Assembly (NCBI RefSeq): GCF_001194135.2
Contig: NC_069003.1
Span: forward strand, 35,470,848-35,511,633
Length of the DNA: 40,786 nt
Direction of reading: 5' to 3'
Source of the DNA: Octopus bimaculoides
Lineage: Eukaryota
Position 1 is the first letter of the stretch. Each line of letters opens with the position of its first letter. The position numbers and the translations under genes are program-made. Positions 14,125 through 38,087 of the stretch are shown here, piece after piece. Under the pieces are notes generated by a model. It was not told the DNA's origin, made no database searches, and saw nothing but the letters and a program-made list of their open reading frames with translations.

Positions 14125-14153
14125 GAGCAAGCAGAAAGCGGAGAGCAGCCATG
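14125..14153 (+). other. Candidate 29-nt exon (E1), ending in GCCATG
   Basis: Long pyrimidine tract ending ctttctgtcgtcttag|GAGCAAGCAGAAAGCGGAGAGCAGCCATG|gttaat. The acceptor is strong and the donor weak. Confidence 0.3.
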
Positions 14154-14772
14154 GTTAATGTAAAAACAACAACAACAACAACACTAGTTTGATGTTTCAC
14201 TCTACTCCGTTCTTACTAGAGGTCTAATTTTCCCACCAAGTGAGAGAAATTATAAGTGCATTGCAGACAATTAGTGACTCACACTTGTATATATGAGTGT
14301 ATCTATGTATATTTGTGTGTGTGTATGTGTGTGTATGATTGTATATATATAAAAGATATTTGATAGATTTTATGACCACTTAGTTTAAATAGTTTAATTA
14401 AACATTTCAAACTGATTAACGAAAGTCATTTCAAAATTTAATTTAATTCAAAACGTTTTGACCCGATTTCATCTTAATTTTCTGTATGTCTGAGTGTATG
14501 TGCGTACGTGTGTGCGCCCGCATCCATCCATCCATCCATCCATTCATCCATCCATCCATTCATATATACCAACTATTTTGAACTGAAATTGTATCAACAT
14601 TGTCTCTTCCTTTAAACACGTGGATAAATGGTTTTCGTACCAGTCACTCAGAAGTATAATATGCTGAAAATATTTATTCTCACTCAACCGTTTTGCCTTA
14701 GTGCTATAACATCCAAAGTTTCATTCAGTACATAATACAGTACTTTCCACCCACCCCTCTTTGTATGTTCAG

Positions 14773-14807
14773 CCCGTTTCAGTCCCCCACTTCTTTTTCT
14801 TGGTTTG
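14773..14807 (+). CDS. Putative microexon E2 (35 nt; 25 nt if the 14783 acceptor is used); coding status and frame not established
   Basis: ctttccacccacccctctttgtatgttcag|CCCGTTTCAGTCCCCCACTTCTTTTTCTTGGTTTG|gtaagt. Confidence 0.45.
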
Positions 14808-15539
14808 GTAAGTCGCTGACTGGATACTACAGCTCAAACCATCTTATACATTGTTCTATATTTTATATTATTTTAATTTTTTGGCGTTGTTACTTTTCGG
14901 AATTTGATTTAGTTGTGAATTTTATGTGTAAAGAAATGGATGCTTTACGCATAAATTCAGTTCGTTACATCATTTCGAGATAACCAGAAGTTACGTTTTT
15001 CTTCTATCATTTCATCATCAATCAATTAAACCATGATAAATACACTACTATAGTCGAATCAACAGATTACTTCAGAGCCATCCATTACTGTGACACATGC
15101 TATCATTTTATTAGTATCATAGTAAGTCATAACTGTAATACCATAGCTGTTTATATCTGTAACACCTTATTTAATCGTAACTGTCACACTGTAATTAGTT
15201 ACAACAAACATCGTTGCCAGCCCTAATTGTGAGAACATTGGCGCTTCAAAACATTAAAATAAAGTGATTCTTCGTTAAGTAGTATCTCGTTTAAGCTAAT
15301 TAAGAGTGCAAGTTGCAGTGATGGTTTCCGACGCCATCATTAAGTATCAAGGCTTTAGGGGCATGTATTCACTGTTACCTGGATATCAAGTGTTTACAAA
15401 GAAAATGAGACGGAGACTATGTAGTTCTTGTGACAGCAGAGGTAGTGAGAATGAGGAAGACGAAGGATCTTTGCTCAAAAAACCAAAATGTTTTGTTATC
15501 CCATTCATAATGTTATTTTGCTTATTGAATTGTCAGTAG

Positions 15540-15547
15540 ATACCATG
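15540..15547 (+). CDS. Putative microexon E3 (8 nt; 11 nt from 15537 via a CAGTAG NAGNAG acceptor)
   Basis: ttattttgcttattgaattgtcagtag|ATACCATG|gtaagt. Confidence 0.4.
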
Positions 15548-15629
15548 GTAAGTAAGGTTATCATCTGAGAGCCTCAATAGAGCATATCCAGAAATGGAAT
15601 TGTCACGGTAAACTGCCAATGCTTGCCTC

Positions 15630-15770
15630 ATAACTTAGCAGTTCGGCCGAAGGTACCAATAGGTTCAGTACTGGGCTTTAAAAAAGATAAGTACTAGGGT
15701 CCTTCGACTAAAATTCTTCAAGACGGTAACCCGGCATGGCCGAAGTCTAGTAACTGAAACAAGTAAAAGA
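15630..15770 (+). mobile_element. SINE 3' portion
   Basis: aacttagcagttcggc...ataagtact...gcatggccg...actgaaacaagtaaaaga matches the recalled tail of an abundant octopus SINE. Confidence 0.65.
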
Positions 15771-16453
15771 AGAAATATATGTGTATACCGACACACCCAT
15801 ATACAAAGGCATAGCACATGCATAGACAAGGACACAGGACAAAAACAAACGCTTTTTGTAATGTATACAGGAATATAAATACAAGGTTGTGATAGCTTGA
15901 AAGTTGGTAAAATGTGCGATTACAGTCAAAATCTAAATAACTTTAGCTTGAAACATAATTTATAATCTACATTTAGGCACCTTCCCATACACACGAATAT
16001 GTAGAATCTCTGTTCATGCTAAAATGTTACTTTGCGTGTGCAGATTGTGGAAGTTTGATATTTATATATTTAAATAGATAAGTGAAGATTTGAGTGTGTG
16101 AATGAGTCACAGCAGAACTGATAGATGTAAATATACGTTCCTGATTACAGGTGTCTGCCAGTTGCATTAGAACTACTGAGGGTGTGATACGATAAGATTT
16201 ACTGTATACGTGTGTGCATTTGCATACGTGCGATTTATCTGCCAAATGGCTGCATATGTAAATACATCTGGGAATAGTTATTCGCCGAACAGACAGCAAT
16301 TAGAAGAGCTTGCCAAATTCTAACATACTGAAGATATGGTTGTATTGACTTACAAGACAGATTAAGTAAATTAACAAGAAAATGTATATTAAGTGTACTA
16401 AACAAAGAGAAGTTAAAGAAAACACGATTAATCTCTTTTCCGAGATACGAAGC

Positions 16454-16454
<1 letters not shown>

Positions 16455-16509
<55 letters not shown>

Positions 16510-16515
16510 TATCTA
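16455..16515. repeat. (TCTA)n microsatellite
   Basis: Directly visible. Confidence 0.95.
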
Positions 16516-17574
16516 TATATCTATTTGTCTACCTACCTACCTACCTATAATTTGTCTTTAAATATCTAATTACTGCGAAGAACTCTTATAGTTCGTATCT
16601 ACTTCATTTATAGCTAGTAGTGGTCGATACAAATCTTATCATGAATTAAACACTAGGTTCCGTTATAGAAGTACCGAAATGATAGAATGGAACTCTATGC
16701 TAGATGTCGTCTAAAACAAATTCACCAGATTTTGACTGAAAAGTCTCGACTTTTCATAACCTTTCCGACCCTGTTATATTTAAAAACTGGAAATTAGTAT
16801 AAAGAAAACTATCAATTCTGACAATTTGAAAATCATTACTTTTAAGACTACCAAGATGAAAATTGAAAACAACAACAGATACAAGAACGATGTAAAGCTA
16901 TATCGTTAGCGCTATGCACTTTATTTTTACTGTTATGATTATATGAAAAGCTAATAAAAAGGATATAAAGAAATGTATGTTCTATTTGTCTAGAAACATT
17001 ATCAGTGTTGATGTTTTTAAAATTAGGTTTAAGCTCTTAAGATACGGTGTAGGAAATACGTTTCTTTCCTAAGGGATTATTACTTGTAAGTAAAAGCTTT
17101 AATCTCGGAATCAACACTGAACTACAGACATAAGTAACTGAGATGTTAACGCCTCGCCAATTTCATTTATGGTACATTAAGCAAGTATTTCAGTTAGCTG
17201 GCACTACACTTTGGCAATGCACTGTTTTCTTGTATGGTTTTTCATTTAACACATAATCCCAATGTCAATTAAATGAATGTATGGATAAATTTGAGGATAT
17301 TGTCTAATTAAAAAATGGCAGTGGGTGTTTTTCATATAGATGACGTGTTGAAGCAACTTAATAAAATGCTATTTCTTCGTTGGTGTTATTATGGTGTGAA
17401 TGTTTTAAAGTCTTAATTATTAAAAAATGGCCGTTTCAATTATATCATAGAAATTATTTAATATCAGTGCTTTCTGTAAAAAATGAATTATAGTGATCTC
17501 ACGTGAGAGTATTGATTTCTGTTTCGCTTACTGCCTTAAATTCTGCAGGAGAATGTAATCGATTTTATTCGGCT

Positions 17575-17700
17575 AGTGCACATTTCATTGATCCCTAATT
17601 GATGAAAGGCAAAAGTTCTCGCGATTTGAACGAAGAGAACAAAATGAGCGTAATTCAATACGGCGAACTATTGCGTATACCACTGCACCACCTTAGCATG
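17575..17700 (-). mobile_element. Highly degraded OR1/Meta-like SINE
   Basis: ttgatccc...gatgaaaggcaaaag...gatttgaac matches the core and B box of 2154-2387. Confidence 0.5.
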
Positions 17701-18085
17701 TCAGGATACTGAAAACAAAGAGAAAAAGTAATTTGTATGAAAAATAAAGGAACCTAAAGTGCGGGAGTGACACGTATTAATAACATATGAAATTACTGAG
17801 ATATTTGTCGGAATTTAGGATTTGACATTGAAATGAAAGTTCTGACATCTTTGCATTAACGTATACTATTCAGTTTCTGTCATCTTAAATAGGAGTATTT
17901 TAGAAGCTTACTTATGAAACTGGAGGAGAAAGCCAGCATGCCACAAATAAGATAAAGCCCTATTAATTGTGAACTAATTTCTGGTTTAAATTTTGATGAT
18001 TAGTTAATAAAACCATTATTAATAGCGTTACACAAAGACACGCCACTTATAACAGACGGTAATATACTTTTCTTTTTCTCGTCAG

Positions 18086-18096
18086 AGACTGGGAAG
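18086..18096 (+). other. Candidate optional microexon E4 (11 nt)
   Basis: ttttctttttctcgtcag|AGACTGGGAAG|gtacta. The acceptor is strong and the donor intermediate. Confidence 0.3.
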
Positions 18097-18650
18097 GTAC
18101 TAAGGATAGTTTAGGTCGAGACTGTATTGAGAACAGTAGATCTAGCACGAAAATGTTACTCCTTTCAAGTTAATTCTGTTCTAGAGTCGTTTTTCACGCA
18201 ATTAAGACGTGAATAATACAATTATTTATTCTCATGAAATAGCCATCTCAGATTGATGTTCCTTTTTGGAGTAAAGCTTTAAAACCCACATGTTACGAAG
18301 AGAAATAGCTAAAAGATGTTGTTTATTTTCATTTTGAGTGTTCAAATTATGAAAATGGCTGCGTAAAAGTGAAACTAAAATACATGAAATAAATTGAATG
18401 CCGTGTTGCAAATGTATAACTGAGAGGATGACGCCGAGCGATGTTTGCTTCTTTCTCCTCCAACTAAAAGGAATTCAATAAACTGGAAATCGTGTGGCAG
18501 ACTCAGTTATCCGGAGATATCCACTAGCTTTACTGCTCATCTAACTCTAAAACTGACATTGGATCCTCAAAGAATTTGCAAATAGTAGATTGAATTCTTA
18601 TGTAAGGAGAGATTCCTCTCGTCCGTCTCTTCCGAGTTCATACTCTTCAG

Positions 18651-18654
18651 TTCG
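18651..18654 (+). CDS. Putative 4-nt microexon E5
   Basis: cctctcgtccgtctcttccgagttcatactcttcag|TTCG|gtaagt. Confidence 0.4.
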
Positions 18655-20723
18655 GTAAGTCATTTACCATTTTATCACATATAAAATCCAAGTTAGTAAA
18701 TTCATATAATTTATTTTTTCAGTGTATCTCAATACCACTTTTCTTATAAATCCTATTTTGTAACCATATCATTTATCTTGCACCAGAATCAAGTTACTTT
18801 CTTAAATTCTGTTTTCTTTCTCATATTTTATTTACACATAATTTATCCGTTAATTGCTGATATTCTCAGATATTCCTGACATAATTAATTCTCATATATG
18901 TAGCACATGTAGAGATCACTGTGATACAAGTATTGGGTCATAATCTCCAGTGCGTGGATAATTTTCTCCTCCGCCGAAACCAATCTCAGAATCCCTGCAG
19001 AAGATCATAGATGCTGCCTGATCTTCTAAGATTTAAAGATTGGGGCTTGTTTCTGATTTTATTCACCTTCAAAATATTATGTCCCTTATAGAAACAAACT
19101 ATATCCGACAACGCTTACTGAAAACTAATTCTATTTACTTTTATTTCAAGATTCACAATATCTTTTCTACTGTAACTCGACATTTCTCTTCCTGGTACCA
19201 ACATAGATTAGCTATTTCAGTACAAACTTGAAATCTCAACAGTTAAACAGCAGGCAAAGGCGACGAGGACGCTAAAACATCATAAAGGGACGTAACCGAA
19301 TCCCTAATGACGGTGTGACCGGAGTTCTTTGAATTCCGGAGGAGGAAGAGGAGGAAGAGGAGGAAGGTGGAGGAGGAGAAAAAGGGAACGAAGAGAAGAA
19401 GAAGAAGATTTCTTCTTGAGGAGCACTTCAAATATTGAATGTTTTTGCGACTATTCTAAGAGCATATGATTCAAATCGTTAAGAAGGCCAGGTTTACAAA
19501 GTGGATTAGCGAAAACTCTTAATAACTCTTATGAAATTGCACTTGGAAAAAATTCGAAAGGGAAAAAAAAAAAAAGAAAAAAGTTTATAAACAGTGAGAA
19601 ATTAAATATTTGTTGTTAATTTCATTAAGTGAAACCTGATTTATTTATCACTGTAAAATTGTAAAATGAAATGAAAGAACATTTAAAACTTGATGTGATA
19701 TTTCACCATCATAAGCTTTATGTTTAATGTATGTTAGTAACTTAGCACTAATTTCTGTTCGTAATAGTCATCAACCGTTCAATTCAATTCCCGTAATTCA
19801 ATACAGACATGGAAATATTAAAATGCATATGTAAACTAAAATTCAAACTAATTTTAGGTCGGAAATTATAATCTCTTTGTCAGACTGCTACAAATTTCCA
19901 TTATTTTCTGAAATTATATAAGATTTGCTTTTTGATAACAATAATATTAACATTTGTATTTATTCTTCTGACACGATATTTGGAGTTTATATTCTTAAGT
20001 CAGTTTTCGTAAGTCATAGAATGTTATATGACATAAGATATTTTATAAGTTATGGGATATATATAGAAAAGAATATTGAAGTAATGATATAGAGGAGAAA
20101 AGTCGGTTAGTCAATTCTGGACTGTAGCTATTTTACATCGAGATAGTTTTATCTTTGAGTCACATTACATCTGCTTCACCTACAAATATTGACCTATATA
20201 TGTTCAGTCTGATTATCAACAGTATCACTCTCACCAGGCTGAGGTTACCTGCTATGATCATGAGAAGTGCCTTTCCATTTGTGACCAAATTATGGAAATA
20301 AATCTACTTAGGAGACAGAGGGAAAATGGCCGCCTGTTAATTCCAGAACATTGTGTTAATAAGTCTGGCAGATGATGATTTCTGCTGTTTCAGTAGACAA
20401 AAGACAGAAAGGTGAAAATAAAAAGGGTCAGAAAATTTGAAAATTTGAAATGCTCTGCATATTAATCCTTGAATCGACCGTCAATATGCTGCCTATCTCA
20501 CAAATGCACAAAGCATCTCAAAGGAAGCTTTTAAGCAGTAACTAACATCACTAGAGATATTAATAAAACGACCCACACTTGAAAAGAGAATCTAAGAATG
20601 CAGAAAGTAGTAACGTCATGGTGAAACGGACAGGTCATAGGAAGGAGGAAAACTACTGCCCAGAATCTAGCTCTTCTCCCTACCTCTTCTCTATGTACGG
20701 AATCCCACTCTCCTTTCCCTTAG

Positions 20724-20731
20724 TTACAATG
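20724..20731 (+). CDS. Putative microexon E6 (8 nt; 17 nt with the alternative gtaagg donor at 20741)
   Basis: cccactctcctttcccttag|TTACAATG|gtaacg. Confidence 0.35.
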
Positions 20732-21151
20732 GTAACGTTCGTAAGGTTCTAGTAAGCATTTGCTTGCCCTTTTTCCGCCTGGCTTATCTGCTTAATACGC
20801 AAGAGTTTAATTTATTTCTAGTTTATTTATTTCTAGTTTAAACCAGAGGATTACTTTCGACAAAAAAAACAAAAAACAAAAAAAAAAAAACGAACTCTCC
20901 GGAACCTGAATTTCGCATTAATTTTATAGTTGGATTAATGCCTTATATCCCAACTGTCGTTTAGACTGGAAATGATCTGTACTAAAATAGTTGTTCCCTG
21001 AAAGGAATCTGCACTTTGCTCAAGAACTGCTTTAAAACAACGTTAATGAATAATAACTATTTTTTGCGACAATCGAAATGATGACAAAGTCTTATCTTCA
21101 CCTGGCCTTTTAAGAGCCATTCATGAAATATTGTTTTTTTTTTTTTTTTAG

Positions 21152-21155
21152 CCTG
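21152..21155 (+). CDS. Putative 4-nt microexon E7
   Basis: Poly-T tract + ag|CCTG|gtgagt. Confidence 0.4.
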
Positions 21156-22177
21156 GTGAGTCTTCGTTGAATAAACTTTTTCCGAGATATTTCACTGTTA
21201 AATCAAATACCGACATGCTGAAGCAAATTTCAAGATGCTTGCTTTCTTCTAAGCTTCTCATTCTGTCGAGTAAAGTTTGGCAAACTGTTATATATGAATA
21301 TTTTCTCTATTTTTTTTAGACGCCGATGGTGATGGTGGCGGTGTGCTGTTAAAAATCAAGAAAATATGTTTAGAATTTATTCCTGTTATTCTCATTAAAT
21401 TCTTGCTTCTGTTAGTCGTTCGAGAATTATGAATATGAATAACCGCTCCCTTTACAGACAATCCCAAGAAGAACTAAATTTACTGTCCCAGTATGGCGAC
21501 TATCGTAGAGAGGGAACAAGCGAGTTGAGTGCGCGACCCAGTTTCAATTCCCAGTGTTGCTTAAATGATTCCATTGATATTGCTGCTTTACCATTTTCAA
21601 AGGCATGAAAGTTAGGAAGCGTTTTATAATGGCTTATTGATTTATTTGAAGTCAAAATCTATTGATTGATATTAGCAGAATAATTAACTGACTAATTAAA
21701 TCAGATAGATGATACGGACATCGCCAATCGATTAAATCTTGTTCCAAACGAAATGTCAATGGTTTGATCCACATCAAGTCATTCTACTTGGTGCCAAACG
21801 GAGGGACTGAAATCCTTTTGAAGTATGGAATAGAACATTTTAACAAAGAAGTGTTAGAATAAATTACTGACTTCAAACAAACATCAACTTGAAATATAGA
21901 AACATTGGAAGCATTCCAATTGTTCCATTACACACCACTGCATAACCCTGTACTGCTACACTCTTTCGTTAAATGCTTCACTCTTACATAATTTCGCTAC
22001 GTTTCTACTCTACCTTCCACCACTGTACGACATTGCACAACTACACTACACTGCAGTACACTAAAAAGTCTATAAGAGTTTTCTGCCTACGTAAGCTAGA
22101 AAATTATAAACAACAATAACAATTGTAGTAAAACATGAGTAACAATGAAATGCTACAAAAATAGTGGGGGTAGTGGC

Positions 22178-22188
22178 GATGATGATGA

Positions 22189-22246
<58 letters not shown>
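22178..22246. repeat. (GAT)n microsatellite
   Basis: Directly visible; it is the source of the poly-His and poly-Ile pseudo-ORFs. Confidence 0.95.
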
Positions 22247-22247
<1 letters not shown>

Positions 22248-22354
22248 GGAAGGACGAGGAGGACGTTGGCTTTTGTTTTCATTAATATTTGATGTGGCAT
22301 TTGAGTTAAAAATCACGTGCTGAACTGATGTATATATATATGTATATATGTATG

Positions 22355-22392
<38 letters not shown>

Positions 22393-23879
22393 TTGATAGA
22401 CATACATACATATATACAATATACATACATGCATACATACGTGCATGCATACATACGTGCATGCATACATACACACATACATGCCGTATAGTTTGCAGCC
22501 CCTCCTTGACCGGTGAGACTGATGTCAATAATGTTCTTTTTTCTTTCTTTCTCTCGTACAAGAAGAATAAAGCAGCAGCTATTCTACGAGAGAAGGAAGA
22601 GCAGTAAAGAATGTATTAAATACATAAATGGAATATTGCTCCGTTGGCAGTCAGCAGTCCTTCGATCAGATAATTATAGGGGTGAATAGAAAAAACGACC
22701 AGTTCCATATTATGCTTAAGACAAGCGATTCTATGACTACAAGGACGTGTTGCGTTGTGCTGTTAGTGCGAAATCATTATTAATCATTAGACTTTATTAC
22801 TATATCTCCTAATGTATAGTCAGCTATACATTTGCAGTTCCACTTTCAGACTGCACTTGTCAAATATGCGTTGTTGTTGCCTTCTTTGCTCGAAATTTCT
22901 ACATTTTCGAGATTGTCAGTTAAACTTCAAGAGACAGCTAATCTTTATGACTTTATTTCCAACCCCTACCAAGTAAATGTATCAGGTCTGTTATTTTGGC
23001 ACTTGGTGACAGCTTTGTATGGAATGTTCCACAAATATTCTTTATGTTGTTTTGCATATATTTAACAACAACCACATTGTTTATATCTAACATAATAACA
23101 AACGAATCATCAATGTTTGTAGTGAAGTATTGGGAAAACAGCTGTCGTCAATCCTTGATAGGAGCAACACGATGTCATCCAGCAAGAAGAGCTAAAACCG
23201 TTGTAAACGTAACATCTAAAAACAACTGCTACAGCTACAGAACAGCTATAACAACTGCGGCGATAACAACAACAATAACAATATCAACATGATAATGTTG
23301 AACATGATGATGATGATAACGATGACGATGATGATGATGAGGAGGTGCAGGAGGATGGTGATTGTGTTGTTGGTTATGATTTCTTTATTTGCCACAGGGG
23401 TAACAAATAGAGGACATTAAAAAGAAAAATTACGAAAAACAGCGGGGGTTTAATAATAATGATAATAGAGTGATGTCATGTACCGAGTATCATTGGACGG
23501 TGCACATTCTACTAAGAAATCTGATAGCTATGTTCATGTCATTAGAGGGTTCCCTCTGGTGTCTATTTTGTTTCAGAGCTCTATTGAAACTCCATTATTG
23601 CCGACACTTGAAAAACAAGGCCAGCTTTTCACTTCTCACATGCTTTTCTCATTGCTCCTCGGTTTCCAGTTCAGCTACAGCAACATTAGATTATTAGGAA
23701 CATTAGATTATCATCGTCGTCGTTGTTTTCTTCTTTTCTAATCGTTTGTTTTGTTTTTTAGTTTTGTTTTGTTTCACGAATAATTTCTCGGGAATTGCAG
23801 TTTTTTTCTCCGGCATTCTTAAATATTCAGTTGATTTCAATGTTACCTTTCTTAAAAATTATCATTATTATCATCCTTA

Positions 23880-25200: not shown

Positions 25201-25859
25201 CTTGATTGCCACACTTGTCTATACTAATAAAGAAAATGTTCTCGGTCTAACACTGATAGCAATCTGCTATCATTATTGTTCTGCATCAATGCCCTTTTCC
25301 TCTCCTCTTTCTATAAGATATATTGCTGTTTGTGTTGGTGGTGTTGGTGGTGTGGGTTGTATGGGTGGTGTGGATGATATTAGTGATGCGGTTATTTTGG
25401 AGATGGTTTTGCATGTGAAATGACCCTTATGTTTTAATTAATCATGAAAAAATAAGAAAAAATAGCTTTACCGGATTCACTTTTAGCAGACAGAGATACC
25501 AGCTGAATATGAATGTTACTATGTGTCAAGCATTATTGCCCATTTAAACATCAAACTGAAAATAAAGCCGGACAGGTGTCAGTAGATTTATCAGAATTCG
25601 AAGCTGATATTTTCCACAACAAGCGGTGTCCTGCGAAATAACTATTTTGTATATTTTTGAAACTGACAGCGGCGTCCTTCCTGCCGGAGTGAGTGAACCC
25701 CAGGAGTGGTGAACCCCAGGAGGGGTGAACGCTGCTTTCATTTAATGAATGCTATTAATTCTTTTCAGAACATGACAGTTGTGAATTTCTATTTACTTCC
25801 TGTGAAATATAGGTTTATTGCACTTAGTATTTATAAACAATGAAATTAATATCGATTTG

Positions 25860-27688: not shown

Positions 27689-28600
27689 AGCGAAAAACCT
27701 CTCCTCAAAGAGGCGCTTCTAGAGATCGAAAATAAACTCAAACTCTTCCTTGAAAAAGAAAGAGTAGAAAGCGAAACCAGGGCGGTGGAAAATACAAAAA
27801 TAAATCCCAAAGCCTTCTAGACGTTTGCGAAAGAGTCTGCCTCGGTGCATTACAAGATAAGACCAATGTTTGAAGAAAACGGCTCGCTAACTGGAGACCA
27901 CAAGAGGATAAATGAAATGCTAAACAAACAATTCCAGAGTGCTTTCACTTCTCCACTGGGAAACATGCAAATAAGCGAGCTTAAAGAGTTTTTCAACACT
28001 GCGGAGCTACACGAGGAAGAAGCGACTATCGATTACATAGACATAAGAGAGAAAGATGTAATATCGGCCATTGATGAGATGAGCTCAAACTCAGCAACGG
28101 ACCCGGATGGATTTCCGGCTGTTCTCCTGAAAACTTGCAAAATAGCTCTCGCAAATCCATTGCAGATATTTATTCAGAGTTTCCTTGCATGTTGAAAACT
28201 TTCAAACTGTTAGAGAAAGGTATCATATGTCCTGTCCAGAAAGGAGGAAGCAAAGCAGATGCTAAAAATTACAGACCCATCTCTCTGACTTCACATGTTA
28301 GCAAGGTCATGGAACGCATCGTCAATAGACTGATCATGTTGCTGGAAGAGAATAACTTGTTCACAAATACACAGCATGGTTTCTGCCTCACATGCCACTG
28401 CAACATTACAACAGAGTGCTGAACGACTCGTATGTGGACGTGATATATCTCGACTTTGCCAAGGCCTTTGACAAAGTTATCATGGGATGATATTTTAGAA
28501 ACTACACGACCTTGGTGTCACTGGAAAATTGAGAGAGAGGCTGCACGACTTTTATTAAAAGACATAAGTAAGACAGTTAAAGCCAATGGTGCTCCCTCTG
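27689..28600 (+). mobile_element. CR1-group LINE ORF2 remnant (pre-RT linker and N-terminal RT), with stops and frameshifts
   Basis: KINPKAF*TFAK; EMLNKQFQSAFT; SATDPDGFPAVLLK; KGGSKADAKNYRPISLTSHVSKVMERIV; QHGF; VDVIYLDFAKAFDKV (28446-28478). Confidence 0.92.
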
Positions 28601-29126
28601 GGAAGAGATCAATCCACAGCGTACCTATTTTAAATAACATTAGCCATGTGAATTGACGCATTTTCTTTCTGGAAGATTATGTTAACATCAAGGAATGATT
28701 CCCTGAAATGGGGAAAAAGGGTGAAAGACGATTCATCTGAAAAGATGACAATGTTCTATTGAGACATTGACCACTTGTGTTAGTCTGGACACCCTTTTCC
28801 GCTTATCAAATCTCATGGTAGGCAGGAGAGTTTTAACAACTGTCGCCCCACACCATAATATCCAGTAAGGGGATGGTTGTGTTCTGTTGTCACTTTTTAT
28901 GCCACTGTGAAAAGTTTTCTAGATACATTTCGCTATTTTGCTTTACAACGGAATCTTTCTTGCAACAACATAAACAGAACTCCACAACAAAGGTATCAAA
29001 CGTTAATCTTACCTTCGTGAAGTTACTGAAAATATACAGTACAACAGATCCGGCTTCAAGGCTTGTGCAGTGGAGACCATAAACAGTTCTGCATATCCTG
29101 TAAAGTATTTTCAGCGCGCTGATATT

Positions 29127-29164
<38 letters not shown>

Positions 29165-31039
29165 NNNNNNNNNNNNNNNNNNNNNNNNNNNNNNNNNNNN
29201 NNNNNNNNNNNNNNNNNNNNNNNNNNNNNNNNNNNNNNNNNNNNNNNNNNNNNNNNNNNNNNNNNNNNNNNNNNNNNNNNNNNNNNNNNNNNNNNNNNNN
29301 NNNNNNNNNNNNNNNNNNNNNNNNNNNNNNNNNNNNNNNNNNNNNNNNNNNNNNNNNNNNNNNNNNNNNNNNNNNNNNNNNNNNNNNNNNNNNNNNNNNN
29401 NNNNNNNNNNNNNNNNNNNNNNNNNNNNNNNNNNNNNNNNNNNNNNNNNNNNNNNNNNNNNNNNNNNNNNNNNNNNNNNNNNNNNNNNNNNNNNNNNNNN
29501 NNNNNNNNNNTTTATGAACATAATCTCTTCCAAGCCACACCCAAACTCCACATAAAGGCATGAAACGATGTTTTAGTTATCCAGCCATCTATAGCAAATA
29601 CATAATTTTAAATGCATATGTGTATATGTGCATGCGCTTGTGTATGTGGGCATGCGTATGTCTGTTTTGTTTTTGGTTGTGTGCGTATGCAAGTGTGTGT
29701 GTTTGCTCCTATTTTCCTTTATTTATTTTTCTATCAATCCATGTTATGTTTCAGCAAAAATGTAAGAAATATTATTTTCTCTGTTGAACAAGGAAAGTTG
29801 CAAACTACGTGAAATTCATACGTGGACATTAACGAATCGTTTGTTCGCGCTCTGCCAGCTTCTTCTAAGTGCGGTGCGTGTTCTGCTCGTGGTTTGTTCA
29901 AATTTCTGCAGAAAAACCGTTCGTTAATCAATTTCTTCTCTTAGAGAACCGTTCATACACACACATACACACACACACACACACACGCATTTCTTCTCTT
30001 AAAGAAGCGTGTATATATGTATATATGTGCATGTATGTGTATGCATGTATATATAAAACAAACATGCATGCATACATGCATACAACGTACATACATACAT
30101 GCATACATATACACATATCAAGTTGCGTCAAGGTGTACTAATCTGAGAATAGCCTGACGCTAAACAGCAGCAACAACAAAGCCTATGCAGTTTGCCAATC
30201 TTTATCATCAATTACTAATAACAACGTTGTAATTCGTTATGTAAAACAAAACTCATTCGAAACAATTTTTAAACCGAGGTAACTTAAATGTTGGAGGAAT
30301 TGCCTCATGACATTGCTTTAAATTATCAACATTTTACTAGAATAATACTGCATGAGACGCTTTCTATTAGACTATAATTGCTTTTCATATCTTTAGAATC
30401 TTCTCGAAGTTGTTATTCCTAAATTTCTTCAATACAGAAGTTAACTTATTTAATTACGAAAGCAGACTTTCTTTGCTATGTAATATCTAATGTGATCTTC
30501 GATTCTTTATGGCCATCAGTTTATTAATTCTGTAAATCACTCTAGTCTCAATAATTGTCAGAACAATTTATAAATTTTCGAAAGTTTTCTTAGTGCCGGC
30601 CTTATTTTAAAACTTCCATAAATTCTTTGTCTTATTAAATCAATATGTGCTGGACTACAACATGTAATAAAACATACTTACTAACAAGAATAAGGACTCT
30701 GCACTCGGCATTCTTGTTTTATGTATTTGACTAGGGGAGGGGAACTTTAAAAGACTCTACACACTTACTTGGGAATATTATTTTAGATTTCTCACTTGAG
30801 ATTAGTTTCTATTTGTAATCATTACCAGCGGAGATTTGTTCCCCACCGCCTTTCCTTTCATTTATTTCTATATTTATTTCTATATTTCATCTCTATCGTT
30901 ACACTTCAAAACATTTTGGAGTAGCATCAGATAATTCTTTACTACAGACAGTGTTTTAGTACGAACTGTAATCTGTAATTAATAGTGTTGGTACGATTGA
31001 AATAAACACTACCCACTAGCCCGTAACAACACACGGGCG

Positions 31040-31068
31040 TGCACGCACGTACGCACACGCACACACAT

Positions 31069-31142
<74 letters not shown>

Positions 31143-31148
31143 AGAGAG
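31040..31148. repeat. (CACG)/(CA)n microsatellite
   Basis: Directly visible. Confidence 0.95.
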
Positions 31149-31489
31149 TTTAGTCTAAAATAAAGAAAACTTAACATAATTTATGAAATGGAAAGAACTA
31201 CTCTGGATATCAAAATCTTGTATAGTTTTGAGGTAACACAACTTGATATTAAAGATCGTTTATATTCGTTTATAATTCTTTTTTTATTTTGCCAACACTA
31301 ACTACGTTTTAAAAGTTAGAAGCAGTCGTATGTTGGATAAATGACTGTATCCCTCGTCAGTTATTTTGTTATTTACCTCGTCGATATCCCGAAATAATAG
31401 AAATACAATCACACATCAAGCAAGCGAGCGACGAAAAAATATAGAGGTACTTCTTAAAGCACAAGCAATTACCTTTTGTTTCTTTGCAG

Positions 31490-31503
31490 TTAGTCACATT
31501 ACG
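31490..31503 (+). CDS. Putative microexon E8 (14 nt; 10 nt from 31494)
   Basis: accttttgtttctttgcag|TTAGTCACATTACG|gtgagt. Confidence 0.5.
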
Positions 31504-33376
31504 GTGAGTGTAATTGACATGCCAACACATGTATACAATGAAAACAAAAGGTGTCCCGATGTAGCCAGTTTTATCAAAGCTTCAAGAACTGGTAGCATTT
31601 TGATAATAAATAAAATTAACAAAAAGCTAAACCTCTCTCGAAATTAGCTTTAAGATGTAACGCCTCCAAAGGTTAGACGGCTCATTATGTTTAGTTATAT
31701 ATTGTTTCTATTTGGTTTTCGTTCCCATCTTAAATGACAATTGCTTTTGTTTCTTGAAATAGCTTGGGTGCATTTAAGAAGGTGGTAGTAATTCTTCTGC
31801 TCGGAACATAAAAGCAACTAGCAATTTAAACTCTTCCTTACCAACTCTGCCAATACTTATGTCGGTTAAAGGTATGATCTTTTATTTATTCTTTTCTGAT
31901 AAACAAATATACCGCATAAATAGTCTGAGATGGGTATTGATAAAATGATATAGTTTACATAATGGTGATATATATCTTTATAGTGTATGTACCAGAGGCA
32001 CGAAGTAGTTATTTGTATTTTTTATAATATAATCACATTTCTCTTTTTTTTTACACAGAATAAAGCTTGGTGCTGAAAGAGATATAAAAGGCAGTTTATC
32101 ATGAATGTATATTCGAAACTTTAAGGTTGTCTTGTCAGTTTAAACACATTTGAATCGCTATCAAATATTTATATTTGTCAAAATTCCAGTACTTCTCGAG
32201 TGGTACAGGCTGCTTACTTTCAATTCTATTATATCGATATATTGTTTGATTCAAGTTAAATTAATTTCTAAATATATCTCTCGTGCTGAGTGAGACATGT
32301 TGGAGTTTTCCTTTTCGTTTTCTTGTGTCTTATTTTACTTACACTAACCCTCTAATTTTCAATCTAGTTAACATAGATTGGTAATAGCTATTTTCACTTG
32401 TATTTAGTAACTAATAGAAACCAAACTTTTACGAATATACAATCTCAGTTTAAAATCTTGTCGCTATTTTGTCTTGTACTCCAGTGGATGCGGAGAGCAA
32501 AGTCTTTTCTTCAAAGAAAATAATATTTGAGCTCACAGTCAATCCTTGATTTACTTTAGCTGTTGCTAAAATAATAGTCAACCGTCTACTTTTAAATATA
32601 AGCTACTCCACTAAGAAATCATTGTTTTAAAGATCTCTGATTATTAAATTTATTAGTGGATTCATGAATTTCACAAATATTTCTCTGGTTATTAAACAAA
32701 TAAAATTTGAGACAAAAGACGAAGTTAAAATTTTACGAAGCAATTTCTCTGACAATAACCTTTATTACAGTTTACATTTTAATATTTTTGTTAGATGTCT
32801 TTGTAATAGTAACATTTCTTTTTAATAGTAACATTAAACTTAATTGGAATACATCAGTTTACTATCTCAACAGCTGATTGAACCATATTTGTGATACTTT
32901 ATTGTCATACTATTAACAGACCTGTTCGTGGTGGATAACTTGTTTTGTGTTAGTTGGACATTTTACGTTACGACTTTAAGTCAGGCGGTGGTTGACTGTG
33001 TATTTACCAAGAAATATTGTTCCAAATTGCTTTACATATACCACTGTTGTTTTGAGAAAGACATGGCTGTTCCAGAATCTAATTTATCTTTTTACAAAGT
33101 ACATACATTTTTGCTAACAATAGGTTAAGTAATATTTTACGTATTCGGTTAACAATTCATATCTTCTGGAAGATTGTCATTGTGTTTATAGGGAAAGATT
33201 CACGACGTCTTGGTACATAGTTTCGACGTTGCTATTCCTATTCATTTTTGTGATTAATTCCCCAGAAAAAAATCTCATTTAATCATAGGCTATCTACCAA
33301 GTTTCCACGATAACCCGTGACTCCAGCCTACATCTGATAGCTAGAACACTGCTTATAAACAAAACTAATGTTTCAG

Positions 33377-33384
33377 TACGAATG
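33377..33384 (+). other. Candidate optional microexon E9 (8 nt)
   Basis: actaatgtttcag|TACGAATG|gtcagt. The pyrimidine tract is short. Confidence 0.2.
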
Positions 33385-34079
33385 GTCAGTACGAGAGTTC
33401 CAGCAACAGAGTTTCCTGATGATTTTCGTCGTTAGCTGAGACAATTACTTGCAAGAAAGAACAGAACTACAGTTTTAAAATTCCAAAAGAGTTCGTTGTC
33501 TTTGGAATAAATATTTGTTTGAAATTTTACAAAATCTTTTTAAAATATATAAAAATGGACGGAAGAAATTTGAGAATTGTATATATATGAAACATTTTTG
33601 GTGCTTGTTTCAAATATTTTCTATTTATTAAGAACAGACGTTACAATAGATCCTATTTCCAAACTTTATATAATTTATCAGAATTATGTAAATTATAAAT
33701 TTCATCAGAACACTCTTATTCACTTACATTGTTTAATATATGTATAGGATAAGATTCAGATTTTGATATTTTCTATGGAAGTCAATGCGGAAAATTACAT
33801 ATATGTTATTAATAAAGGTGTGAAAAACTAAGAGAATGCGAAGTATTAGATTAAATTCTTTGTTAGATAAACAAAAATACTCAGAAACTTTTCTAGAAAA
33901 ACACAGGGAATCAAATAATTTTTAGAGAGTTTGTAATATTTCGAGGATCATTAAATGTTCTCTTGATTCTGACACAATTATAAATAATTTCTTTTTAATT
34001 AAAACAAATAGTGCTATGAATGTTAAAATACAATCGAGTCAGCGAGTCGTTTAAAGTTTACTCTTTCATTTAATGATTA

Positions 34080-34170
34080 TTTCTAATTTTGGAACCAGGC
34101 AGCAGTTTTTAGGTGGGAGAGGGGAAAATTTAATCCAGTCTTTGTTTGTTACTTTACTTTAACGTTGCCA
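34080..34170 (-). mobile_element. SINE tail remnant
   Basis: ttctaattttggaaccaggcagcagtttttaggtgggagagggg resembles the family tail. Confidence 0.4.
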
Positions 34171-34639
34171 AGATGTATTAACAATATAATAAGCGTGAGT
34201 TCTATCAAGTATTGTCTGCAATAAACTCGCAGTACATTTTGCATTATTCTTGTAGCTTTCAGAAAAGTATGGGTGTTTCTGCTGTTCATTTTCCTATCAT
34301 TTTCGTTCGATAGCTTTGTGGTCATCAATATGCTGGAAATTATAGTCATTTGAACATTCAAGGCTCTCTCATTAGGTTAAGTGTTAAAAGTATTTGATTG
34401 TTTTCTAAAAAATGCGTATCAAGAACTTTATAGTTGAGAAGATATTTTCTCATCTATAGTATGTTATTTAATCTCTTCATTGTTTACCATAAGAAACTTG
34501 ACATGGTTTTATCAGCGAAATATTTTCTGGAATGATCTTTCTATAGGAAAGATACCGTTACCAGAGAACATAAGACGTATTTCTATTATCTCAAAACACA
34601 TAGGAAAATATGGAATTTTATTGGAATATTGATAGAGTC

Positions 34640-34760
34640 AACTCGTGTACGAAGTTTGCTGTTTAGAATACTAGTCTCTGCGTCATTATTCTTTGCTCGA
34701 TTCAGATGAGGATCAACTTTTGCCTTTCGTCCAGCGTGTCTAGCAAATCAATACGTTTCG
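34640..34760 (+). mobile_element. Degraded OR1/Meta-like SINE head and core
   Basis: gctcgattcagatgaggatcaacttttgcctttcgtcc matches gttcaaattccgccgaggtcgactttgcctttcatcc. Confidence 0.5.
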
Positions 34761-34868
34761 ATAAAGAATGAATTCTCTATATTTATACCTGAAGGTGTCA
34801 TAAAGCTCGTAACATTGTACAGACTTCAAATAACATTCATTTTATACTCATTCAGCATTATATATACC

Positions 34869-34901
<33 letters not shown>

Positions 34902-34906
34902 GGAGA

Positions 34907-34961
<55 letters not shown>

Positions 34962-35274
34962 TCCGAATGTTCATTTTGTATTTTCTATATTTTAGGTCTC
35001 AAACAGTTGAACAAGATTGGAAAATACCAAACGAAAATTTTGTTGCTGAATTATCAACTTTCTGCCTTTAATAACTAAGCTAGTATGATTAGAATATGCA
35101 AGTACTTTTTGCAATTTCTTTTCAAAATAAATGAAAAGACCTCATTGATTTGAAGCAAAATATATTACCGAATTCAAACCAACCAATCATCAGTGGAAAC
35201 AAAAGTGACGGAACATACAGATACTACATTGTTTTACTGTTTAATGAGTACCTTTTGGCACGAAAAGTGTGAAT

Positions 35275-35277
<3 letters not shown>

Positions 35278-35322
<45 letters not shown>
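35278..35322. repeat. (AAT)n microsatellite
   Basis: Directly visible. Confidence 0.95.
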
Positions 35323-35323
<1 letters not shown>

Positions 35324-35489
35324 TATATGAAAGAGATAGATAGAGAGGTAGATGGCTAGATAGCTAGCTAAACAGCTAGCTATAGACATAGTGATATATA
35401 TATATATCTATATATATATCATTATGTCTATAGCTAATACACAGAATTACATATATACCCATACACACACATAATATTTACATACTGAC

Positions 35490-35561
<72 letters not shown>

Positions 35562-35671
35562 AGACTCTGACAGTGGATCAGATAGAGTATCAGCAAAAGA
35601 ATTACGTAACTTCTGAATAAATAGCTGTTATATATAAAGTTAAAAATACCTACAGACACACGCACATACAC

Positions 35672-35711
<40 letters not shown>

Positions 35712-36210
35712 TTATATATATGTATATATATAAAATCTGTATATCAGCAAATATTTATACAAACGAATGTTCGAATGTTTGTAGAAGATTTTATAATGTT
35801 TAGAATATTTTTCTCATAGTAACATAGTATTACAAACGAAAACTAATTTATTAGCGTAAACTTAATCTGTAGATTTTGATCTCGAAAATATTTGAAGTTT
35901 GACTATCAGAAAAGAATTTCTCCGCTAAACATTAAAACTAACAAGCTGTACTTGAAATAATACAGCCTATATAACAAATTAAAAAGATAAAAACAATGTA
36001 TGTTGAAATTTTATCAATTAATCCGAATACTAGCCATTATTTATGTACAATTACGATTGTCTTGTACGGTAGGTATGTATTAAACTGAAAAGGAAGAAAA
36101 GAAAGAAGTTAACTATGGTTTGGCTAACATATAACGTGGTCTTCATTGGCCAATAGAATGTTAGTTTTCCCCCCGTACTATAGTCTTCAGTTATGTCTCA
36201 TTCTCTCATT

Positions 36211-36560
36211 CACTCACCAGCAGGCGCTATGTGATAATGGCAGCTCTAGCTTCAGCAGTGATTGACTGCTAAACTTCAAGCGAGTGGGCGGCTACTTTAC
36301 CAGGCTTACAACCAGAGGAGAGATCCATGACATGCGCACGCGCACGACATTCTACACGCATAAAAACACACACTCTCTCTCTCTCAGATACACACTCACA
36401 CACAAGCGCGCGCAGTCATTCAATTGAAGGAATCATACACAAACTTGCCCTTAAAAAATAAAATGACAATCCAATAGTTTTCTGTACATACAAACTGGAA
36501 CAACAATGAGAAAACGAAAATGATTTCATTTCTGGTCACCGATTGGCCTATTGGCGAGAG
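36211..36560 (-). promoter_or_regulatory. Candidate promoter and non-coding first exon on the minus strand
   Basis: Locally GC-richer. Minus-strand donor CTG|gtgagtg at 36218/36217, NRF1-like tgcgcacgcgca at 36333-36344, and CCAAT/ATTGG at 36471, 36542 and 36550. Confidence 0.3.
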
Positions 36561-37393
36561 TTGGGTGTTCTAACTATTGCTAGAAACTCAGATAAAACAA
36601 ATCAAAGCAAAAAATAAAAACAATTATTTAACAATGGTGCTTTCAACATCCCCCCACCCTCATCCCGAAAATATGTCAGTCCACCACCGCCACTATCATT
36701 AAAAGACCTCCACTTACAGACAACAACAGCAATGAGAAATCCCTAAAATTCAAATCCAGGAAATGGGGAATAAAATGTATTGAGTAGGAGAGTAAAAAGG
36801 TCGAAATATCGATTCATCAATTGGAACGTTTTATTGTGTTGTTAGTTATGTGTTGAATCTTGAATGGAGGAAATTGTCGACTTCATGGAAACTTTTTCAA
36901 AAGCATTTTTACATAGGGACATAATAAATAATATGTATCGAAAATATTTATTTCCTCGCTAGTATTCCGATGAACTAAAAGGGGGTGGGTTAATTGAGTT
37001 ATAAGATATAAAAGAAAATCTTAGGATTTGTTTACAATGATTTATAAGATGCCATTGACTTTGTACGGCTGCTGAATGCACTAATAACCATAATAACGAT
37101 TTCTTTTAAGAACAATGTTTCCTTAAAATAGTAATTAATAAAATAATTAATAATAAAATTACACACACACACATGCACACAAACACATAATATATAAAAG
37201 TTAATAAGGAAATCCATACAATTTATATAGAAAAATAGATGGTATTATTTTTAATATTTTTAACTATTAAAAATAATTCTTAGGCTTTAGTGTGTGTGTT
37301 ATATATATATGTACAGATACACAAACAAAGATACAACCAGAGATATATGCATACCAATACGTTAGCATAATACATATACACGTATATATATAT

Positions 37394-37424
<31 letters not shown>

Positions 37425-38065
37425 ATGTAAACACACACATATACGTACATATAAACAAATATATACATATATTCACATATTTATAGATCCAGAAATCTAT
37501 CTATCACTCTGTCTCTCTCTATACACACACACATTGTATATATGCATATATCAACACACTAATGTATAAAGACACACACATATGCATGCATATGAAATTG
37601 TTAGTAAAAACTAATGCTTTATGAATATTAAAAATATTAGTGTAAACGTAAGTGTATCTTGTATTTGCGTCCAAATATTTCCGAGTAGCAGACAACACAT
37701 TGCTTTTCCATAAAACAATCTGAATATTATCAGTCCAGCTGAACTGTTCTTCCTGAAACAGTCCGGTCTGTCATATTCATATCCATATATTTATTTGTTA
37801 TTGATATCACATAAACTTTGAGTCTGAGCAACTCTCCTTTAGTTTTTAAAATATTATACACAAAAGCATAAATAAAACCAAATACTAAACCCCCTTCATT
37901 CTTCGTCTCTCTCTCCCCCGTCCGCCAAATTTATAGACTTATGTGACTTGCAGCAGTAGTAGCAACAACAGCAACACGTGTATAGAGACATACATGAAAC
38001 ACGTTGCACAAACATGCGATTTCAAACTATATTAGTGGGTCTTTATTTCTACTTGATGTTTCCAG

Positions 38066-38087
38066 TCAACATAATTGGACTTTGGTG
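38066..38087 (+). CDS. Putative microexon E10 (22 nt)
   Basis: ctttatttctacttgatgtttccag|TCAACATAATTGGACTTTGGTG|gtaagt. Confidence 0.5.

What the first reader, a model, noticed from the sequence alone, without database searches (positions are those of the whole stretch)
14125..38087. Chain of plus-strand microexons over 24 kb: candidate micro-exon gene
Seen: all six G|GTRAGT donors I found by eye on the + strand (after 14807, 15547, 18654, 21155, 31503, 38087) lie only 4-35 nt downstream of a pyrimidine-tract/AG acceptor. A seventh unit (20724-20731) has a strong acceptor and G|GTAACG. Joining E2(35)+E3(8)+E5(4)+E6(8)+E7(4)+E8(14)+E10(22) gives 95 nt with exactly one open frame, RFSPPLLFLGLIPCSLQCLLVTLRQHNWTLV, which is hydrophobic and signal-peptide-like. 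Established: genes built from strings of microexons (MEGs, encoding secreted variant proteins) are described in Schistosoma, and neural microexon programmes depend on Srrm2/3/4 eMIC proteins in bilaterians. Inference: this window is the intronic body of an easily missed micro-exon gene in an octopus. Caveat: one open frame out of three over 31 codons is not rare by chance, so the splice-site geometry is the main evidence.
Basis: partly seen in the sequence, partly recalled or inferred. Interest (0 to 1): 0.82.

Follow-up and report, generated by a model that had tools for sequence, protein, structure and literature searches.

The report
Exon-like splice-site pairs, octopod DNA
One strand of this octopus-type DNA carries far more closely paired splice-acceptor and splice-donor signals than chance allows, so tiny exon-like units may exist here, but nothing shows that they encode the proposed secreted protein.

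Summary
The six G|GTRAGT sites are the complete + strand set (the - strand has two). Five of the six have an acceptor-like element scoring at least 7 bits on my own matrix 4-35 nt upstream. The rate is 5.5% for composition-matched 7-mers, 0/8 for GGTRAGT on the - strand plus 63 kb of other genomic DNA, and 6/108 for other strong donors. P ranges from 3e-6 to 5e-4 depending on scoring. The excess is strand-specific, confined to the 3-40 nt spacing, and survives matching for pyrimidine content.

The coding interpretation does not hold. No unit length is a multiple of 3. The single open frame is expected (P 0.55-0.85 under composition-matched nulls), because the units are A-poor. The same T/C richness explains the "hydrophobic" peptide. 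The chain has no Met. Neither the joined peptide nor 73 window ORFs match any of 5.8 billion proteins. The only recognisable coding remnant is a decayed LINE reverse transcriptase, closest named relative in Argonauta.

Best reading, at about 0.45: spliceosome-recognisable, non-coding micro- or pseudo-exons of a + strand transcription unit, use unproven. Chance and repeat by-products remain rivals. The case needs RNA-seq junctions and cross-species alignment.

The parts
14125..14239 (+). Unit 'E1'. 115 nt from the acceptor at 14125, or 20 nt from an inner acceptor at 14220. The donor is GTGAGA.
   Evidence: Acceptor 10.7 bits (14125) or 9.2 bits (14220); donor 7.8 bits. Stops in all three frames. 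Holds a Kozak-like GCAGCCATGG that opens only a 13-codon ORF.
14773..14807 (+). Unit E2, 35 nt, pyrimidine-rich, donor G|GTAAGT.
   Evidence: Acceptor 8.8, donor 8.4 bits. The upstream 60 nt are 77% pyrimidine, top 0.5% of the window.
15540..15547 (+). Unit E3, 8 nt (11 nt from the CAG at 15537), donor G|GTAAGT.
   Evidence: Donor 9.9 bits, but the acceptor is weak: 1.3 bits, or 3.5 for the CAG. This is the one GGTRAGT without a convincing acceptor.
18637..18654 (+). Unit E5. 4 nt from the CAG at 18651, or 18 nt from a GAG at 18637. Donor G|GTAAGT.
   Evidence: Acceptor 5.6 bits (18651) or 7.1 bits (18637); donor 9.1 bits.
20724..20731 (+). Unit E6, 8 nt, strong acceptor, weak donor G|GTAACG. 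Alternative donors lie after 20740 and 20751.
   Evidence: Acceptor 11.4, donor 5.7 bits. An A-rich tail at 20861-20891 suggests the unit lies in or next to a + oriented retroposon.
21152..21155 (+). Unit E7, 4 nt (CCTG), between a T16-AG acceptor and G|GTGAGT.
   Evidence: Acceptor 11.0, donor 11.4 bits; the best pair in the window. The pyrimidine tract is a T16 homopolymer.
31490..31503 (+). Unit E8, 14 nt, acceptor ctttgcag, donor G|GTGAGT.
   Evidence: Acceptor 11.1, donor 11.1 bits. The only unit with UGC directly before the AG.
38066..38087 (+). Unit E10, 22 nt, donor G|GTAAGT, 80 nt upstream of the gap at 38168-38700.
   Evidence: Acceptor 7.8, donor 10.0 bits; gap coordinates.
21320..21340 (+). 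The donor lies in GGTG-rich sequence.
   Evidence: Acceptor 8.7, donor 7.8 bits.
25318..25349 (+). Extra + strand pair, 32 nt. The donor lies in low-complexity GGTG repeats, so it is less convincing.
   Evidence: Acceptor 9.2, donor 7.4 bits.
29859..29873 (+). Extra + strand pair, 15 nt, donor GTGCGT.
   Evidence: Acceptor 9.5, donor 8.9 bits.
29165..29510 (.). Assembly gap inside the proposed E7-E8 intron.
   Evidence: 346 N; the left flank is (TA)n. No feature spans it, so continuity is untested. It cannot change any frame because both neighbouring units are thousands of bases away.
27821..28653 (+). Decayed non-LTR (LINE) reverse-transcriptase fragment inside the proposed E7-E8 intron.
   Evidence: Pfam RVT_1, E 9.5e-9, 5' half only, with frameshifts. 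936 homologues; best named one from Argonauta hians at 48% identity.

Best explanation
Between about 14.1 and 38.1 kb the + strand carries a non-random series of exon-like signal pairs. Each is a 3'-splice-site-like element (pyrimidine tract plus YAG) 4-35 nt upstream of a consensus 5' splice site.

I read them as units that the spliceosome can recognise, belonging to one + strand transcription unit of an octopod genome. They would be very small non-coding exons, or intron-embedded cryptic, decoy or 'stepping-stone' exons. I do not read them as the coding microexons of a MEG-type secreted-protein gene.

Proposed mechanism (inferred, not shown):
- U2AF/U2 bind the tract-AG and U1 binds GGTRAGT of each unit.
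- The donor of one unit pairs with the acceptor of the next, so the 0.4-10.3 kb between units can be removed piecewise.
- The joined 95-183 nt then either stay in a mature RNA as UTR or lncRNA sequence, or are discarded with the surrounding intron.

Shown: the sites exist, and their pairing is strand-specific, spacing-specific and far above background. Also shown: there is no coding signature.

Inferred: that the pairing reflects splicing-related selection or use, and that the units belong to one transcript.
For: - The six sites are the complete set of + strand GGTRAGT.
- 5 of 6 have an acceptor of at least 7 bits within 3-40 nt, against 5.5% of composition-matched 7-mers; P 3e-6.
- P is 3e-4 after matching for pyrimidine content.
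- Permutation gives P 0.0002-0.006 on + and 0.65-1.0 on -.
- Only the 3-40 nt bin is enriched. Longer spacings and the reversed order are not.
- There is a dose-response with donor strength.
- Shuffled sequence gives 1.3 pairs with combined score of at least 17, against 8 observed on + and 1 on -.
- In the external null (Argonauta and two other assemblies, 63 kb, both strands), 0/6 GGTRAGT and 6/77 strong donors have such an acceptor; Fisher 0.003.
- Pyrimidine enrichment is local, -60 to -1 only.
- The units are not copies of one repeat.
- Non-coding reading: lengths are 35, 8, 4, 8, 4, 14 and 22 nt. The open frame is expected by chance. The 115-nt E1 is closed in all frames. There are no protein matches.
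- Intron-embedded splice sites and decoy exons are known in long introns of other animals (papers listed: PMC4482092, PMC4829307, PMC7373989).
Against: - There are no expression data or cross-species conservation, so use is unproven.
- The numbers are small (six sites), my matrix is home-made, and the window reached me because a reader had noticed the pattern.
- The exon-side consensus is absent: 0/7 units have A at -2 of the donor and 0/7 start with G.
- The units are pyrimidine-rich and A-poor, unlike typical exons.
- 4-nt and 8-nt exons leave no room for simultaneous U2AF and U1 binding (own knowledge).
- One acceptor is weak (15540), and one tract is a T16 homopolymer that may be a retroposon tail.
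- No host gene, promoter-like CpG island or strand bias of poly(A) signals was found.
Confidence: 0.45

Rival explanations
1. Chance constellation. Ordinary intronic or intergenic DNA in which six consensus donors happen to lie behind pyrimidine-rich stretches containing an AG. It came to attention only because a reader was looking for such pairs.
For: - Only six sites carry the signal.
- The count of GGTRAGT itself, 6 against 2, is within expectation.
- Rule-based scoring gives only P 0.005-0.05.
- The exon-side consensus is absent.
- The number of windows the scan has read is unknown.
Against: - P is 3e-6 to 4e-4 under composition-matched controls, 3e-4 under pyrimidine-matched controls, and about 0.003 by Fisher test against the small pooled null.
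- The excess is specific to one strand and one spacing bin.
- The donor set was complete, not selected.
Confidence: 0.2
2. A micro-exon gene whose tiny exons are joined into an mRNA that encodes a secreted, variable protein, analogous to schistosome MEGs.
For: - The splice geometry is real.
- One frame stays open across the 7-unit chain (95 nt) and across an 11-unit chain (183 nt, a multiple of 3).
- Introns are short at the 5' end (coordinates).
- MEG proteins evolve fast, so missing homologues are not decisive.
Against: - 0/7 units are symmetrical (2/11 with the extra units), whereas symmetry defines MEGs.
- The open frame is expected at P 0.55-0.85 for 7 units and 0.16-0.37 for 11.
- There is no Met and no separate signal-peptide exon. 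E1 is closed in all frames.
- Hydrophobicity follows from the T/C-rich composition.
- The joined peptide is absent from 5.8 billion proteins.
- Two introns exceed the 5-kb MEG range.
- MEGs are described as restricted to platyhelminths, and no report from a mollusc genome turned up.
Confidence: 0.07
3. By-products of repeats. Pyrimidine tracts that are antisense poly(A) or A-rich retroposon tails, homopolymers or microsatellite flanks sit next to donor-like words. This makes exonisation-prone sites that no selection maintains.
For: - The acceptor of E7 is a T16 run.
- An A-rich tail lies 130 nt downstream of E6.
- The window is packed with microsatellites and holds a LINE fragment.
- Two of the extra pairs have donors inside GGTG repeats.
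Against: - The units and their flanks share no sequence, so no single element family explains them.
- Acceptor-like sites are equally common on both strands (86 against 100), yet pairing occurs only on +.
- Most tracts are mixed C/T, not homopolymers.
Confidence: 0.12

Closest known systems
Schistosoma micro-exon genes (MEGs)
   Same: A string of very short exon-like units on one strand, separated by introns of hundreds to thousands of bases. Introns are shorter at the 5' end.
   Different: - MEG exons are symmetrical (multiples of 3, mostly 6-36 bp). They are flanked by conventional exons that include a signal-peptide exon, and the family is platyhelminth-restricted.
- Here no unit length is a multiple of 3, and two units are only 4 nt.
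- There is no Met or signal exon.
- Two introns are 6.6 and 10.3 kb.
- The host is an octopod, and there is no coding evidence.
SRRM3/4 (eMIC)-dependent neural microexons of bilaterians
   Same: Size range of 3-27 nt, strong 5' splice sites, long flanking introns.
   Different: - Neural microexons are isolated cassettes inside conserved coding genes and mostly preserve the frame.
- 74-79% of them have a UGC between branch point and AG.
- Here 7-11 units occur in a row with no ordinary coding exon in 40.8 kb, none preserves the frame, and UGC is present at 1-2 of 7.
Intron-embedded splice sites: decoy exons, pseudo-exons, and nested or intermediate splicing in long introns
   Same: Paired, good-scoring 3' and 5' splice sites inside long non-coding stretches with no coding constraint. 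Such sites are proposed to be engaged by the spliceosome without contributing to the mRNA (PMC4482092, PMC4829307, PMC7373989).
   Different: From my own knowledge, not checked in these papers, described decoy exons and pseudo-exons are of ordinary exon length. A regular series of 4-35-nt units has not, to my knowledge, been described. Use of these units is untested here.
Recursive splice sites (ratchet points) and RS-exons
   Same: Found in long introns; an acceptor next to a strong donor motif.
   Different: Recursion needs AG|GTRAGT with zero spacing, so that a 5' splice site is regenerated. No unit starts with GT, and the + strand has no AGGTRAG at all. The only zero-spacing sites, 8781/8782 and 20248/20249, are on the - strand.

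Membership tests
Schistosoma-type micro-exon gene (MEG) | Most of the coding region is made of very small symmetrical exons (length a multiple of 3) | tested here: not met
   Lengths are 35, 8, 4, 8, 4, 14 and 22 nt: 0/7 multiples of 3, and the sum of 95 is not one. With the four extra scan-defined units, 2/11. Definition.
Schistosoma-type micro-exon gene (MEG) | 10-20 short exons interspersed with introns of 0.1-5 kb | tested here: inconclusive
   7-11 units. Introns are 732, 3103, 2069, 420, 10334 (contains the gap) and 6562 nt, so two are outside the range (coordinates; range).
Schistosoma-type micro-exon gene (MEG) | Continuous ORF with an N-terminal signal peptide, encoding a secreted protein | tested here: not met
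   The chain has no Met. The open frame is expected by chance (P 0.55-0.85). The 115-nt upstream unit is closed in all frames. Hydrophobicity is explained by 64% T+C. Secretion itself is not testable here.
Schistosoma-type micro-exon gene (MEG) | Platyhelminth host, or homology to known MEG proteins | tested here: not met
   The best named relative of the RT fragment is from the octopod Argonauta hians. The joined peptide has no hit at E<=0.01 in 5.8 billion proteins.
SRRM3/4-dependent neural microexon | A 3-27 nt, frame-preserving cassette within a conserved protein-coding gene | tested here: not met
   No unit preserves the frame. 73 ORFs of at least 55 aa from the whole window have no protein match, so no host coding exon was detected.
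SRRM3/4-dependent neural microexon | UGC motif between branch point and AG (present in 74-79% of such exons) | tested here: not met
   UGC occurs within 27 nt upstream of the AG at E8 (-5) and E3 (-21) only, 2/7. Background is about 16% (my estimate).
SRRM3/4-dependent neural microexon | Neural, SRRM-dependent inclusion | not testable with these tools
   No RNA-seq access.
Recursive splice site / RS-exon | Acceptor AG immediately followed by GTRAGT, so that a 5' splice site is regenerated | tested here: not met
   The units start with CC, AT, TT, TT, CC, TT and TC. AGGTRAG occurs 0 times on +.
Decoy, pseudo- or cryptic exon in a long intron | Paired consensus-grade 3' and 5' splice sites in non-coding sequence | tested here: met
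   Scores are 7-11 bits on both sides for E2, E7, E8 and E10. There is no coding signature.
Decoy, pseudo- or cryptic exon in a long intron | Lies within an intron of an expressed gene on the same strand; engaged by the spliceosome but absent or rare in mature mRNA | not testable with these tools
   No host gene could be identified and no transcript data are available.

The most novel reading that the evidence does not exclude
The units are really spliced together in a + strand transcript. That would be a chain of asymmetrical 4-35-nt microexons spread over more than 24 kb in a cephalopod. It would be either the first MEG-like gene architecture outside flatworms, or a new 'stepping-stone' way of removing a very long intron piecewise.
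Probability: 0.25. Interest if true: 0.8.

Novelty: new variant of a known kind. Interest (0 to 1): 0.45.

Why it matters
Strings of microexons are known only from flatworm MEGs, and exons of 4-8 nt are at the limit of what a spliceosome can define. If these units are spliced, they show one of two things:
- an easily missed gene architecture in a cephalopod; or
- a way of handling very long, repeat-rich introns by closely spaced acceptor-donor stepping stones.

Either would matter for annotating cephalopod genomes, whose genes have long introns and are poorly resolved by short reads.

If the units are not spliced, the case is still useful. It shows that a visually convincing 'open frame' and 'signal-peptide-like' peptide can arise purely from pyrimidine-rich composition.

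Tried and rejected
- **Open frame as evidence.** Rejected. Composition-matched nulls give P 0.55-0.85 for 7 units and 0.16-0.37 for 11.
- **Protein evidence.**
  - A composite query of the spliced 31-mer plus eight ORFs overlapping the units gave no hit.
  - 73 further ORFs from the whole window gave no hit (a first attempt was over the length limit).
  - Exact look-ups of two ORFs found nothing on record.
I did not try another route.
- **Ordinary exons.** No acceptor-donor pair 41-600 nt apart with an open frame looked like coding sequence.
- **Common repeat origin of the units.** No similarity by blastn or Smith-Waterman. The E3/E6 resemblance is not significant after 55 comparisons.
- **Small-RNA host gene idea.** Rfam found nothing at gathering scores, and only microsatellite-driven mir-297/466-type matches below them. 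There are no tRNAs.
- **Strand of transcription.** AATAAA/ATTAAA counts show no bias, 92 against 103. There is no CpG island.
- **Regional composition as the cause.** Rejected. Pyrimidine enrichment is confined to -60 to -1.
- **Recursive splicing.** Rejected. No unit begins with GT.
- **Flatworm origin**, which would have favoured MEGs. Rejected by the RT relatives.
- **The repeat finder on the whole window** returned only microsatellite and N-run families.

Full report
**What the window is.**
- The window is 40,786 nt at 34% G+C. It has five N gaps, and four of the five abut (TA)n runs.
- It is dense in di- to tetranucleotide microsatellites.
- The only recognisable coding remnant is a frameshifted 5' half of a non-LTR reverse transcriptase at about 27.8-28.65 kb on the + strand. 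It matches Pfam RVT_1 at E 9.5e-9.
- Its best named relative among 936 hits is a hypothetical protein of the octopod Argonauta hians, at 48% identity over the full query. An octopod origin is therefore plausible and a flatworm origin is not.
- Rfam finds nothing at gathering scores, and only microsatellite artefacts below them. ARAGORN finds no tRNA.

**The observation.**
- GGTRAGT occurs exactly six times on the + strand, at the six quoted positions, and twice on the - strand. The donor set is therefore complete and not hand-picked.
- Without the -1 G there is no strand bias: 23 against 26.
- I scored sites with a simple position-weight matrix written from consensus frequencies I know. It is not MaxEntScan.
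- Acceptor scores are 8.8, 1.3, 5.6, 11.4, 11.0, 11.1 and 7.8 bits for the seven units. Donor scores are 8.4, 9.9, 9.1, 5.7, 11.4, 11.0 and 10.0 bits.
- One acceptor (15540) is weak. One donor (20731, GTAACG) is weak. E5 has a better GAG acceptor that makes it 18 nt.

**Is the geometry more than chance? Yes, by every control I could build.**
- *Shuffles.* Dinucleotide-preserving block shuffles give 1.3 pairs with combined score of at least 17. The + strand has 8 and the - strand has 1.
- *Permutation.* Circularly shifting acceptors against donors gives P 0.0002-0.006 on + and 0.65-1.0 on -.
- *Spacing.* Only the 3-40 nt bin is enriched. At thresholds of 7 bits for both sites (7/7) it holds 9 pairs, against 0-4 in equal-sized bins at other distances, in the reversed order, or on the other strand.
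- *Threshold-free test.* A rank test gives P about 0.001, and the effect grows with donor strength.
- *Composition-matched control.* 5 of 6 GGTRAGT have an acceptor of at least 7 bits within 40 nt, against 5.5% of 541 occurrences of permuted versions of the same 7-mers. Binomial P is 3e-6, and 3e-6 to 4e-4 across thresholds.
- *Pyrimidine content.* The pyrimidine enrichment is local, -60 to -1. After matching each site for pyrimidine content, P is still 3e-4. The placement of the AG therefore adds information.
- *Cruder rule.* Requiring YAG after at least 74% pyrimidines and a GTRAG donor gives 6 pairs against 1.4 expected, P 0.005.
- *External DNA.* In 63 kb from other genomes, 21 kb of it Argonauta, none of 6 GGTRAGT and 6 of 77 strong donors have such an acceptor. 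The window's + strand has 5/6 and 6/19. Fisher P is about 0.003 against the pooled null.

**Is it coding? Nothing says so.**
- The units contain 19% A against 33% in the window, so stop codons are rare in them. Shuffling within units, permuting their order or trimming them leaves an open frame in 55-85% of trials.
- An 11-unit chain of 183 nt is also open in one frame, but that is expected in 16-37% of trials.
- The same T/C richness forces Phe, Leu, Ser and Pro codons, which is why the peptide looks like a signal peptide.
- The chain has no Met. The only ATGs are out of frame.
- The 115-nt unit at the start of the interval has stops in all three frames.
- No unit length is a multiple of 3.
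- The joined peptide plus eight ORFs overlapping the units found nothing at E<=0.01 among 5.8 billion proteins. Nor did 73 other ORFs from both strands of the whole window at E<=0.1. No ordinary coding exon is detectable in the window.

**The gap.**
- The 346-N gap at 29165-29510 lies within the proposed 10.3-kb intron between E7 and E8, so its unknown length cannot affect a reading frame.
- Its left flank is (TA)n. The RT fragment ends upstream of it, and no feature continues across it.
- That the two halves of the chain are adjacent in the genome rests on the scaffold alone.

**What it most likely is.**
- A strand-specific and spacing-specific coupling of good 3' and 5' splice signals is what exons look like. 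I know no other process that makes it.
- The units share no sequence with each other, so one repeat family does not explain them.
- My best reading, at about 0.45, is a series of spliceosome-recognisable micro- or pseudo-exons of one + strand transcription unit, in non-coding context.
- Arbitrary lengths, pyrimidine-rich content and the missing exon-side consensus fit signals that need not survive in a coding mRNA. Such signals could be UTR or lncRNA exons. They could also be intron-embedded decoy or stepping-stone sites of the kind described for long human introns (PMC4482092, PMC4829307, PMC7373989).
- Rivals:
  - repeat by-products such as the T16 tract before E7 and the A-rich tail after E6, 0.12;

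**Comparison with known kinds.**
- *MEGs.* They are defined by very small symmetrical exons, introns of 0.1-5 kb and a signal peptide, and are described as restricted to platyhelminths. Symmetry, signal peptide and host all fail here. A literature search found no report of MEGs from a mollusc genome.
- *SRRM3/4 microexons.* They preserve the frame, sit in conserved genes and usually carry a UGC before the AG. Here UGC is at 2 of 7 acceptors, about background.
- *Recursive sites.* They need AG|GT with zero spacing. No unit starts with GT, and AGGTRAG is absent from the + strand.

**Verdict.**
- Whether the units are used can be settled only with transcript data and cross-species alignment, which these tools do not reach.

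Noticed in passing
window 301-333, 6188-6737, 29165-29510, 38168-38700, 40293-40302: Four of the five assembly gaps abut a (TA)n run (for 29165-29510 only the left flank); the flanks of 40293-40302 were not read as sequence. This looks like a short-read assembly breaking at microsatellites, so gap lengths are unreliable.
   Followed up: partly
window 27821-28653 (+): A decayed LINE reverse-transcriptase fragment: the 5' half of RVT_1 with at least two frameshifts. The closest named relative is in Argonauta hians. Closer relatives (60-73% identity) sit on contigs under 1 kb in ENA assemblies.
   Followed up: yes
window 8781/8782 and 20248/20249 (- strand): Two zero-spacing acceptor|donor junctions on the minus strand, ...cattgcttttag|gtgggc and ...gatcatagcag|gtaacc. 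This is the layout of recursive splice sites. The + strand has none. Their expected number was not computed.
   Followed up: no
window 15537-15559 and 20721-20748 (+): E3 and E6 with their splice sites resemble each other: TAGwTACmATGGTAA[cgttc]GTAAGGTT, 21 of 23 aligned bases plus a 5-nt gap. Each is followed by a 4-nt unit. The match is not significant after correcting for 55 pair comparisons.
   Followed up: yes
window 14148-14192 (+): Inside the 115-nt unit E1, a near-perfect Kozak context (GCAGCCATGG) opens only a 13-codon ORF that runs through an (ACA)6 repeat to a TGA.
   Followed up: no
window 20861-20891 and 21136-21151: An A-rich tail (+) and a T16 run lie 245 nt apart, bracketing the sequence between E6 and E7. 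They are probably the tails of two oppositely oriented retroposons. The T16 run supplies the 'acceptor' tract of E7.
   Followed up: partly
window ~10130-10165 (+): A GTGGCTTCGATTCCCAG motif resembling a tRNA T-arm, within the most G+C-rich 500 nt of the window (49%). This is possibly the head of a tRNA-derived SINE. ARAGORN calls no tRNA here.
   Followed up: partly
window 22178-22247: A (GAT)23 microsatellite that reads as an 18-residue His run in a 124-aa minus-strand ORF. It looks like a gene but is a repeat artefact.
   Followed up: no
window, + strand donors: None of the seven donors has A at -2, and none of the seven units starts with G. The exon-side halves of both splice-site consensus sequences are missing although the intron-side halves are near-perfect.
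   Followed up: partly
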